From Octopus sinensis (taxonomy: Eukaryota), in assembly GCF_006345805.1 (NCBI RefSeq), contig NC_043005.1:81468001-81532000 (forward strand): a stretch of DNA of 64,000 bases, written 5' to 3'. The first letter of the stretch is position 1. Each line of letters starts with the position of its first letter. Below, piece after piece: positions 30,955 to 31,110 of this stretch. The notes under the pieces were generated by a model. That model searched no databases. It was not told the origin of the DNA and saw only the letters and a list, made by a program, of their open reading frames with translations. The translations under genes and the position numbers were made by a program.

Positions 30955-31110
30955 CATATATGTGAGGTAGGATATCCGCGGTAAACTCTGATTGACAACA
31001 GATTTGAAGGCCACTGCCGTGAGGACGAGTGTGAAAGAAAGCTGAAGTCGATTTTGTGGGTATTTCTTATCCACTGAGAATGTAGTGAAGGCCAAGCTGC
31101 AGATTAAAAA
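30955..31110 (-). CDS. Internal coding exon (52 aa, phase 0-0) of a pentameric ligand-gated ion channel, M1 end / M2 / M2-M3 loop; resembles the invertebrate Cys-less ('cys-loop ligand-gated ion channel-like') group
   Basis: Translation FLICSLAFTTFSVDKKYPQNRLQLSFTLVLTAVAFKSVVNQSLPRISYLTYM has R0', T6', L9', P23' and the SLPxISYLT motif. Acceptor is ...ctattctattccag|TTT with a pyrimidine-rich tract. Donor is ATG|gtaaga. Length 156 nt = 52 codons, no stop. Confidence 0.9.

What the first reader, a model, noticed from the sequence alone, without database searches (positions are those of the whole stretch)
30955..31110. Exon of an orphan-ligand 'Cys-less'-type pentameric ion channel
Seen: a cleanly spliced 52-codon exon with pLGIC M1/M2/M2-M3 hallmarks. 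Established: most metazoan pLGICs are Cys-loop receptors with GEK (cation) or PAR (anion) before M2, and a separate invertebrate/protist branch lacking the Cys-loop disulfide exists with largely unknown ligands. Inference: the motifs RLQLSFTLVLT..FK.VVNQSLP.ISYLTY match my recollection of that branch rather than nAChR, GABA/Gly/GluCl or the nAChR-derived octopus chemotactile receptors. The extracellular domain is not in the window, so absence of the cysteines cannot be seen.
Basis: partly seen in the sequence, partly recalled or inferred. Interest (0 to 1): 0.72.

Follow-up and report, generated by a model that had tools for sequence, protein, structure and literature searches.

The report
Pore exon of Cys-less octopus channel
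This 156-base stretch is the exon that encodes the ion-conducting pore of an already annotated octopus gene for a 'Cys-less' pentameric ligand-gated channel, resembling the bacterial channel ELIC, whose ligand and role are still unknown.

Summary
Window 30955-31110, on the minus strand, is a 52-codon, phase-0/0 exon with an AG acceptor and a GTAAG donor. It encodes the end of M1, the M1-M2 loop, all of M2, the M2-M3 loop and the first two residues of M3 of a pentameric ligand-gated channel.

[quoted passage not shown] That gene spans about 525-540 kb, which explains why no other exon lies in the 64 kb window.

The full-length octopus protein has Glu and Leu where Cys-loop receptors have their two cysteines. 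Its best solved-structure match by sequence is bacterial ELIC, followed by GABA-A and glycine receptors, with no nicotinic receptor among the best 60. Its oyster orthologue (76% identical) is in the published dataset that defined the lophotrochozoan Cys-less clade.

Ligand and ion selectivity remain unknown.

One unexpected family-level lead: members lack signal peptides and have a reversed positive-charge bias. Their 'extracellular' domain may in fact be cytoplasmic. This is untested.

The parts
30955..31110 (-). [quoted passage not shown]
   Evidence: Translation. 100% match to three octopod proteins. The cDNA L005 aligns only here.
31111..31135 (-). 3' splice site: pyrimidine-rich tract (...ctttgctgctattctattcc) ending in the AG acceptor at 31112-31111
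   Evidence: Sequence read. Homologous ORFs in other genomes all break at ...Q|F.
30950..30954 (-). 5' splice site, GTAAG donor
   Evidence: Sequence read. The protein continues with DKY... in cDNA-derived relatives, whereas the genomic read-through gives V....
31075..31110 (-). C-terminal half of transmembrane helix M1 (FLICSLAFTTFS, residues 223-234)
   Evidence: AF2 model of the octopus protein: helix 211-234.
31060..31074 (-). M1-M2 loop (VDKKY, residues 235-239); the adjoining PQNR carries the -3' to 0' selectivity-filter positions
   Evidence: AF2 helices. Family table of positions: -2' Q 63/E 15, -1' N 74, 0' R 80 of 80.
30985..31059 (-). Pore-lining helix M2 (PQNRLQLSFTLVLTAVAFKSVVNQS, residues 240-264): R0', Q2', T6', L9', A13', S16', Q20'
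   Evidence: AF2 helix 240-264. Alignment to ELIC M2. Conservation counts.
30961..30984 (-). M2-M3 coupling loop (LPRISYLT, residues 265-272) with invariant P266, Y270, L271 and T272
   Evidence: Invariant columns in the 80-sequence alignment. Aligns to LPRLPYTT of ELIC.
30955..30960 (-). First two residues of M3 (YM, residues 273-274)
   Evidence: AF2 helix 273-298.

Best explanation
[quoted passage not shown] Inferred by homology: five subunits assemble so that the M2 helix encoded here lines the pore (Q-2', Q2', T6', the invariant L9' gate, A13', S16', Q20'). The invariant M2-M3 loop (LPRISYLT) couples the Pro-loop of the ligand-binding domain to pore opening, as in ELIC, GLIC and Cys-loop receptors.

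Not determined: the ligand, and the ion selectivity. The octopus filter reads P-Q-N-R. It lacks both the acidic ring of cation channels (ELIC S-E-R, nAChR G-E-K) and the exact P-A-R of anion channels. I lean weakly (about 55:45) towards a poorly selective or anion-permeable pore. Trematode and some bivalve and other relatives with E at -2' look cationic, as PMC9874803 argued.
For: Exon and splice sites. Family signal of the 52 aa. Profile search: 2,210 family members, full-length ones from molluscs, nemerteans, annelids, rotifers and flatworms, mostly named after ELIC or GLIC by NCBI. 52/52 identity to O. bimaculoides, O. sinensis and Argonauta proteins. Gene range 525 kb and 538 kb, which explains the lone exon. 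E...L at the Cys-loop positions in 19/19 relatives and in the octopus protein. ELIC is the best PDB match by sequence, then GABA-A gamma2 and GlyR. AF2 model: pLDDT 81.9, beta-sandwich plus four helices. Foldseek matches pLGICs at E about 1e-20, TM-score up to 0.76. A spliced octopod transcript contains the exon, with the alignment ending at the splice sites. Purifying selection: against a bivalve transcript, 40 of 156 nt differ, with 30 codons changed synonymously and 3 nonsynonymously. Oyster orthologue K1QX27 is in the published dataset. The clade is described in PMC4795631 and PMC9874803.
Against: The ligand-binding domain and M3-M4 lie outside the window, so Cys-lessness rests on identity with annotated proteins, not on contiguous sequence. 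I could not fetch the 0.5 Mb locus or pin the source species: three octopods share the identical peptide. No phylogeny was built here, so clade placement relies on E-value ranking and on published trees that include the oyster orthologue. By fold alone the nearest structures are anionic Cys-loop receptors, not ELIC, so 'ELIC-like' is a statement about sequence only. Pentamer formation, ligand and selectivity are untested inferences.
Confidence: 0.92

Rival explanations
1. The exon belongs to an ordinary anionic Cys-loop receptor subunit (GABA-A, glycine or GluCl type). The M2-M3 motif SLPRISY resembles their SLPKVSY.
For: GABA-A gamma2 and rho1 and GlyR are the next-best hits to the exon and to the full protein. 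Foldseek's top 50 are all GABA-A, GlyR or RDL. Some database entries for relatives are named 'GABA receptor'.
Against: The annotated protein carrying this exact exon has E and L instead of the two Cys-loop cysteines and has no second Cys pair. The filter is PQNR, not PAR. ELIC outranks all Cys-loop receptors by sequence. The literature places lophotrochozoan Cys-less sequences outside the anionic clade.
Confidence: 0.04
2. The exon is part of a nicotinic-type receptor or of the nAChR-derived cephalopod chemotactile receptors.
For: The organism is an octopod, where those families are expanded (background only).
Against: No nAChR appears among the best 60 PDB hits for the exon, the full protein or the family profile. 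There is no GEK motif and no Cys-loop. Chemotactile receptors are reported as intronless, whereas this is one exon of a 0.5 Mb gene.
Confidence: 0.01
3. The exon is a dead relic: an isolated pseudo-exon, a stray exon copy or a fragment of bacterial ELIC-like DNA, and not part of a working gene.
For: It is the only recognisable coding piece in 64 kb of repeat-rich sequence. ELIC is its best structural-database match. One O. vulgaris model stops just before it.
Against: The peptide is identical in three octopod species' gene models. A spliced transcript of another octopod includes the orthologous exon. Splice sites are canonical. Substitutions are overwhelmingly synonymous. The same intron positions occur across many lophotrochozoan genomes. 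Introns averaging tens of kb are expected for a 525 kb gene encoding 421 aa.
Confidence: 0.03
4. It is the same gene, but the channel sits in the membrane upside-down relative to classical pLGICs. The N-terminal beta-sandwich 'extracellular' domain and the C-tail would be cytoplasmic, so the channel would be gated by an intracellular ligand. The M1-M2 loop encoded here would then face outside and the M2-M3 loop inside.
For: 65 of 70 scored family members have no signal-peptide-grade hydrophobic segment before the domain. The 5' end of a bivalve transcript is closed by an in-frame stop. Bivalve isoforms use three alternative hydrophilic first exons, and their C-tail micro-exons are rich in RRxS motifs. 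N-terminal extensions reach 644 aa. A conserved polybasic tail follows M4, and Lys+Arg bias is reversed in 62 of 68 members (479 vs 216), while the two controls give the classical sign. The domain has no disulfide pair and only 25 N-glycosylation sequons against 67 expected, while M3-M4 loops have 27 against 17. No paper in the held library discusses this.
Against: All the evidence is statistical and comes from relatives. The octopus N-terminus is short (27 aa) and mildly hydrophobic. Some proteins translocate sizeable N-terminal domains without a cleavable signal peptide (own knowledge). The sequences are related, so the counts are not independent. No experimental topology exists.
Confidence: 0.4

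Closest known systems
Lophotrochozoan 'Cys-less Pro-loop receptors' (Jaiteh, Taly & Henin 2016, PMC4795631), e.g. oyster K1QX27; also the schistosome Cys-less LGIC clade and planarian gabrg1/2 (Johnson et al. 2023, PMC9874803)
   Same: It is an orthologue or paralogue of these. It is 76% identical to K1QX27. It has the same E...L Pro-loop flanks, no second Cys loop, the same M2 and M2-M3 motifs, and the same exon boundaries. A Schistosoma japonicum member is recovered at E=4e-92.
   Different: Cephalopods were not in either published inventory: there is no Octopus sequence in the 2016 dataset. The molluscan orthologue group has Ser at 16', where other lineages have F/W/Y. Octopus has Gln at -2', where the schistosome members have the Glu used to argue for cation selectivity.
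ELIC, the Erwinia (Dickeya) ligand-gated ion channel (PDB 2VL0 and many others)
   Same: It is the best solved-structure match by sequence for the exon, the full protein and the family profile. Both lack the Cys-loop cysteines. The pore lining is nearly identical: R0', Q2', T6', L9', A13' and an LPR..Y M2-M3 loop.
   Different: ELIC is a bacterial, intronless, periplasm-facing protein with a signal peptide and E at -1' (cation-selective) and F at 16'. The octopus protein has N at -1', Q at -2' and S at 16', a polybasic post-M4 tail and no evident signal peptide. Identity is low outside M2.
Anionic Cys-loop receptors (GlyR alpha, GABA-A beta/gamma/rho, RDL, GluCl)
   Same: Same fold (Foldseek E about 1e-20, TM-score up to 0.76). 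They are the second-best sequence matches. The M2-M3 loop is similar (SLPRISY against SLPKVSY).
   Different: They have the C-x13-C disulfide, usually a second Cys pair in loop C, a PAR filter, a cleaved signal peptide, a basic cytoplasmic M3-M4 loop and a short C-tail. This family has none of these.
nAChRs and cephalopod chemotactile receptors
   Same: Same superfamily only.
   Different: They are not among the best 60 matches. This protein has no GEK, no Cys-loop and no vicinal cysteines. Chemotactile receptors are reported as intronless, whereas this gene spans about 0.5 Mb.

Membership tests
Pentameric ligand-gated ion channel (Pro-loop receptor) superfamily | M2 pore helix with conserved 0' basic residue and 9' Leu, followed by an M2-M3 loop with a conserved Pro | tested here: met
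   Encoded in the window: R0', L9' and P266 are invariant in 80/80 relatives. Pfam Neur_chan_memb E=8.5e-4 on the 52 aa alone.
Pentameric ligand-gated ion channel (Pro-loop receptor) superfamily | N-terminal beta-sandwich ligand-binding domain with an F/YPxD Pro-loop, plus four TM helices | tested here: met
   Tested on the annotated octopus protein that contains this exon, not in the window. FPFD is present. AF2 gives a beta-sandwich at 28-209 plus four helices, pLDDT 81.9. Pfam Neur_chan_LBD passes its cut-off in 5 of 6 relatives scanned; one scores 24.2 against a cut-off of 26. Foldseek matches pLGICs.
Pentameric ligand-gated ion channel (Pro-loop receptor) superfamily | Assembles as a pentamer and conducts ions on ligand binding | not testable with these tools
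   Only a monomer model was made. There are no functional data for any molluscan member.
Eukaryotic Cys-less clade (Jaiteh 2016; Johnson 2023) | Both cysteines flanking the Pro-loop absent | tested here: met
   E and L at the two positions in the octopus protein (FMENLELNDFPFDVQDL) and in 19/19 relatives. The loop itself lies outside the window.
Eukaryotic Cys-less clade (Jaiteh 2016; Johnson 2023) | No second (loop-C) Cys pair, which distinguishes it from 'secondary' Cys-less members of the anionic clade | tested here: met
   Only one conserved Cys in the ligand-binding domain (C205, 75 of 80 sequences).
Eukaryotic Cys-less clade (Jaiteh 2016; Johnson 2023) | Phylogenetic grouping with the published clade, separate from the anionic and cationic Cys-loop clades | tested here: inconclusive
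   No tree was built. Indirect support: oyster orthologue K1QX27 (76% identical) is in the published alignment. The paper's text puts lophotrochozoan Cys-less sequences in the primary clade. ELIC outranks Cys-loop receptors by E-value.
Anionic Cys-loop receptors (GABA-A/Gly/GluCl) | C-x13-C Cys-loop and a P-A-R filter before M2 | tested here: not met
   E...L loop. The filter is P-Q-N-R.
nAChR / chemotactile receptors | C-x13-C Cys-loop, G-E-K filter, closest similarity to nicotinic subunits | tested here: not met
   None of these is present. No nAChR among the best 60 PDB matches.
Prokaryotic pLGICs (ELIC/GLIC type) | Bacterial or archaeal gene, intronless, with a periplasmic domain behind a signal peptide | tested here: not met
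   This is a spliced exon with AG/GT sites in a 525 kb animal gene. Family members lack signal peptides. It resembles ELIC in its pore but is not a member of that group.

The most novel reading that the evidence does not exclude
The whole lophotrochozoan Cys-less family, including this octopus gene, may be an 'inside-out' pentameric channel. Its ligand-binding beta-sandwich and its polybasic C-tail would face the cytoplasm, which would explain why the disulfide was never needed. It would then be gated by an intracellular ligand or signal, not by a transmitter. The supporting evidence is all sequence statistics on relatives. There is no signal peptide in 65 of 70 members. Bivalve isoforms use alternative hydrophilic first exons. 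Lys+Arg bias is reversed in 62 of 68 members. The domain is nearly free of N-glycosylation sequons. C-tail micro-exons carry RRxS motifs. I found no mention of this idea in the searchable literature.
Probability: 0.4. Interest if true: 0.85.

Novelty: already known. Interest (0 to 1): 0.3.

Why it matters
As an annotation, it matters little. The exon is part of a RefSeq gene model, and the Cys-less clade was described in 2016 and 2023.

It does show that cephalopods keep a highly conserved member of this clade: 76% identical to the oyster orthologue, with the 52 pore-exon residues identical in O. bimaculoides, O. sinensis and Argonauta. No ligand, ion selectivity or physiological role is known for any member outside planarian RNAi phenotypes.

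If the family-level topology lead holds, these would be the first pLGICs with a cytoplasmic ligand-binding domain. That would change how orphan members should be screened: ligand applied from the inside, and targeting to organelles or cilia considered. It would also give a simple reason for the missing disulfide.

Tried and rejected
1. Other exons of the gene in the window. I ran tblastx against a related locus, tblastn with 19 full-length relatives and tblastn with the three octopod proteins at word size 2. Nothing scored better than E=0.2. A second, tandem copy of the exon, as seen in L001, was also sought and not found.

2. Short-peptide searches of the indexed protein database return only short ORF calls. 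They gave no full-length relatives for the exon and no canonical Cys-loop controls when baited with a GlyR TMD stretch.

3. Fetching the annotated octopus locus. Isoform X2 products are not on record. The X1 loci were found, but no DNA was returned because the gene range exceeds 100 kb. I could not assign the window to one octopod species or map the neighbouring exons.

4. Structure comparison did not separate ELIC from anionic Cys-loop receptors. All of the top 50 hits were GABA-A, GlyR or RDL, so fold gives superfamily only.

5. No phylogeny was built, because reference sequences could not be fetched. I relied on E-value ranking and published trees.

6. Bacterial contamination or horizontal transfer was rejected on the splice sites, the intron conservation and the gene size.

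7. Alternative splicing of this pore exon in annotated bivalve and octopus isoforms was not seen. Isoforms differ at the N-terminus, in a small insert within the ligand-binding domain and in the C-tail.

8. The largest ORFs elsewhere in the window have no Pfam domain, and the window has no Rfam match.

Full report
**1. The observation**

The reverse complement of window 30955-31110 reads, without a stop, FLICSLAFTTFSVDKKYPQNRLQLSFTLVLTAVAFKSVVNQSLPRISYLTYM. The plus strand of the same interval has three stops.

On that strand the exon is preceded by a pyrimidine-rich tract ending in AG (window 31112-31111) and followed by GTAAG (30954-30950). It is 156 nt long and in phase 0 at both ends.

The 52 residues alone match Pfam Neur_chan_memb (E=8.5e-4, model positions 7-55; below the gathering score only because the piece is short). 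Among solved structures they match ELIC best (E=5e-4), followed by GABA-A gamma2, rho1 and beta subunits. The ELIC alignment is QNRLQLSFTLVLTAVAFKSVVNQSLPRISYLTY against [33 protein letters not shown].

A search of 5.8 billion proteins returned 14 short ORF calls on eukaryote-like contigs, 65-90% identical (E down to 6e-21). All break at the same places (...Q|FLI... and ...SYLTY[M/L]|V...), so the exon and its intron positions are conserved in many genomes.

**2. What gene it belongs to**

A profile of these exons, searched without a word index against 1.84 billion representatives, found 2,210 proteins at E<=0.001. These include full-length models of 400-700 aa. Source names show that they come from a gastropod, a nemertean, a leech and flatworms. 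[quoted passage not shown]

Searching with the closest full-length member (P0058, from a bivalve-like transcript) listed 263 relatives at E<=1e-10. They span bivalves, gastropods, a chiton, cephalopods, Lingula, nemerteans, annelids, rotifers and flatworms.

Three of them contain the window's 52 residues exactly:
- Octopus bimaculoides XP_052827029.1, residues 223-274
- O. sinensis XP_036361945.1, residues 237-288
- Argonauta hians GAB1602453.1

The window is therefore octopod, and the gene is already annotated (isoforms X1-X5; an earlier name was 'uncharacterized protein LOC106884076').

The gene occupies 525 kb in O. bimaculoides and 538 kb in O. sinensis for a protein of about 420 aa. That explains why tblastn with 19 relatives and with the octopod proteins themselves finds no other exon in the 64 kb.

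**3. Is the exon used, and is it under selection?**

A spliced octopod transcript contig (L005, Logan SRR27666088) aligns to the window only across 30954-31111. Identity is 91%, with 14 mismatches and one amino-acid change. The alignment stops within one ambiguous base of each splice site.

Against a bivalve transcript (L002), 40 of 156 bases differ. Thirty codons differ synonymously and only three nonsynonymously. All octopus isoforms contain the exon. It is a constitutive exon under strong purifying selection, not a relic.

**4. Is it 'Cys-less'?**

In the octopus protein the Pro-loop reads FM-E-NLELNDFPFDVQD-L. Cys-loop receptors have their two cysteines at the positions occupied here by Glu and Leu. 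The same E...L pair is present in all 19 relatives that cover the loop. This is the polar/hydrophobic replacement described for prokaryotic channels.

Only one cysteine is conserved in the whole ligand-binding domain (C205). There is therefore no second, loop-C-type pair of the kind that marks 'secondary' Cys-less members of the anionic clade (criterion from PMC9874803).

By sequence, ELIC is the best solved relative of a full-length orthologue (1.3e-16) and of an 80-sequence family profile (5.5e-22). Next come GlyR and GABA-A gamma2, at about 1e-14 to 1e-18. No nicotinic or 5-HT3 receptor is among the best 60.

An AlphaFold2 model of the octopus protein is confident (mean pLDDT 81.9, pTM 0.74). 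It shows a beta-sandwich (residues 28-209) and helices M1 211-234, M2 240-264, M3 273-298 and M4 from 302. Foldseek matches it to pLGICs at E about 1e-20, but the top 50 are all GABA-A, GlyR or RDL. Fold therefore gives only the superfamily.

The oyster orthologue K1QX27 is 76% identical to the octopus protein. It is in the alignment of Jaiteh et al. 2016, which contains no octopus sequence. That paper places the lophotrochozoan Cys-less sequences in a primary Cys-less clade with protist channels, separate from both Cys-loop clades. It lists the 'secondary' losses as nematode, spider and Oikopleura genes. Johnson et al. 2023 describe the schistosome members and report RefSeq relatives in Mollusca. 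A Schistosoma japonicum member is in my family set at E=4e-92.

I did not build a tree myself, so I mark clade placement as indirectly supported.

**5. What the exon encodes, and how it probably works**

Mapping the exon on the model gives:

| Segment | Residues | Window coordinates |
|---|---|---|
| Second half of M1 | 223-234 | 31110-31075 |
| M1-M2 loop | 235-239 | 31074-31060 |
| M2 | 240-264 | 31059-30985 |
| M2-M3 loop | 265-272 | 30984-30961 |
| First two residues of M3 | 273-274 | 30960-30955 |

With R243 as 0', the pore-facing positions are Q-2', Q2', T6', L9', A13', S16' and Q20'. In 80 relatives, R0', L9', P266 and Y270 are invariant. Q2' occurs in 77, T6' in 73 and N-1' in 74. This is essentially the ELIC pore, apart from -1'/-2' and 16'.

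By homology, five M2 helices would line the pore with L9' as the hydrophobic gate. The invariant LPRISYLT loop would couple the Pro-loop to opening. This is inference, not shown here.

Selectivity cannot be called. The filter is P-Q-N-R, which is neither G-E-K/S-E-R nor P-A-R. Fifteen of 80 relatives have E at -2' (the trematodes plus scattered bivalve, gastropod, nemertean and other sequences). PMC9874803 used that residue to argue for cation selectivity. Octopus and 62 others have Q. I lean weakly towards a poorly selective or anion-permeable pore in octopus.

All 29 sequences with Ser at 16' are molluscan. Other lineages have F, W or Y there, and ELIC has F.

The ligand is unknown. The only functional data I found are planarian RNAi phenotypes cited second-hand, and later searches found nothing more.

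**6. An unexpected family-level lead**

While reading the full-length relatives I noticed that none begins with a signal peptide.

- N-terminus. Of 70 scored members, 65 have no hydrophobic window of signal-peptide grade anywhere before the beta-sandwich. The median best 9-residue hydropathy in the first 40 aa is 1.25.
- Not an annotation artefact. N-terminal extensions are 16-278 aa in that set and reach 644 aa in trematodes. A bivalve transcript has an in-frame stop upstream of its start codon. Bivalve isoforms use three alternative first exons, all hydrophilic.
- C-tail. Directly after M4 comes a conserved polybasic motif (for example PCKKRRxMxQKDxEYK or ASRRRREMxxKDxDYR). Tails of up to about 400 aa follow, and bivalve C-tail micro-exons carry RRxS motifs.
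- Charge bias. Lys+Arg on the side that is extracellular in classical receptors (M2-M3 loop plus tail) outnumber those on the classical cytoplasmic side by 479 to 216. The bias is reversed in 62 of 68 members. The two controls give the classical sign.
- Glycosylation sites. The beta-sandwich has 25 N-glycosylation sequons in 80 sequences against 67 expected from composition. The M3-M4 loops have 27 against 17.

Together with the missing disulfide, this fits an N-in/C-in topology with a cytoplasmic 'extracellular' domain. I found no paper that raises this.

The evidence has clear limits. It is statistical and comes from related sequences. The octopus N-terminus is short and mildly hydrophobic. 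Signal-less translocation of N-terminal domains does occur in some proteins (own knowledge). I give the idea about 0.4 and keep it separate from the verdict on the exon.

**7. Comparison, novelty and scores**

In its pore the protein resembles ELIC, and in its fold it resembles any pLGIC. It is a member of the published lophotrochozoan Cys-less Pro-loop receptor clade. It is not a member of the nAChR/chemotactile, GABA/Gly/GluCl or prokaryotic groups, because defining features of each were tested and not met.

Because the gene model and the clade both already exist in public records, I rate the finding as already known. Cephalopod members have not been discussed in the literature I could search. 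Interest is 0.3 as it stands. If the topology lead is confirmed, it would deserve about 0.85.

**8. Surroundings**

The rest of the window looks like a giant intron.
- The GC content is 22-40%.
- There are long AT-rich microsatellite arrays.
- There are dispersed SINE-like repeats of about 150-190 nt.
- There is an exact 809/810-nt tandem duplication.
- There is an element with perfect 446-nt inverted terminal repeats.
- There is no Rfam match, and the six largest ORFs have no Pfam domain.

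Noticed in passing
window 22593-25783: Perfect 446-nt inverted repeat arms (22593-23038 and 25338-25783, 100% complementary) flank 2,299 nt. That interval holds ORFs of 199 aa (23104-23703, minus) and 338 aa (24066-25082, plus), neither with a Pfam domain. It looks like a very young foldback or TIR-type mobile element inside the intron.
   Followed up: partly
window 9856-10102, 14515-15095, 28730-29330, 30270-30415, 32476-32664, 59720-59945; inverted copies at 37216-37451 and 45531-45833: A dispersed repeat family of about 150-190 nt (60-89% identity), sometimes in tandem triplets and SINE-like. 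One copy lies about 540 bp downstream of the exon. There is no Rfam or tRNA-family match at gathering threshold.
   Followed up: partly
window 5100-9000 and 42990-43280: Several kb of AT-rich microsatellite-like arrays (GC 22-27%). They produce long spurious ORFs encoding YIYIYI-type peptides.
   Followed up: no
window 60296-61904: Two 100% identical blocks of about 300 nt are each repeated 809-810 nt downstream (60296-60595 at 61105-61404, and 60799-61094 at 61609-61904). This looks like a tandem duplication of an ~810-nt unit, though the ~200 nt between the blocks was not shown to be identical.
   Followed up: no
L001 9986-10177 and 10941-11108 (ENA ERZ25069866 contig); proteins P0017 and P0021: In another, probably bivalve, genome the homologous pore exon is present as two intact tandem copies about 955 nt apart. 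Two gene models that closely resemble the Macrostomum lignano members (their own source species was not looked up) string two divergent copies together (ENRLQLSF-type and EYRLRLSF-type). This suggests mutually exclusive alternative pore exons in some lineages. The octopus window has a single copy, and annotated octopus and bivalve isoforms do not vary here.
   Followed up: partly
proteins P0173, P0179, P0180, P0178 (Ruditapes, Mercenaria); P0284-P0288 (octopus): Isoforms differ by three alternative hydrophilic first exons and by C-tail micro-exons (RNRR, SFRQRSVYV) carrying RRxS-type motifs. Octopus isoforms differ by a small insert in the ligand-binding domain and by alternative C-termini.
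   Followed up: partly
protein P0287 (O. vulgaris CAI9729321.1): This O. vulgaris model ends ...NIFMVT|VSVNLRYTFYVIPY. It reads through the donor of the preceding exon and lacks the pore exon and everything after it. This is probably an annotation truncation caused by the very long intron.
   Followed up: no
family alignment A2 (80 sequences): The ligand-binding domain is strongly depleted in N-x-S/T sequons (25 against 67 expected). It keeps a single near-invariant juxtamembrane Cys (C205), and a second Cys often sits right after M4 next to the polybasic motif. Non-molluscan members share an N-terminal amphipathic helix (for example LIDALETLRDSI) upstream of the domain.
   Followed up: partly
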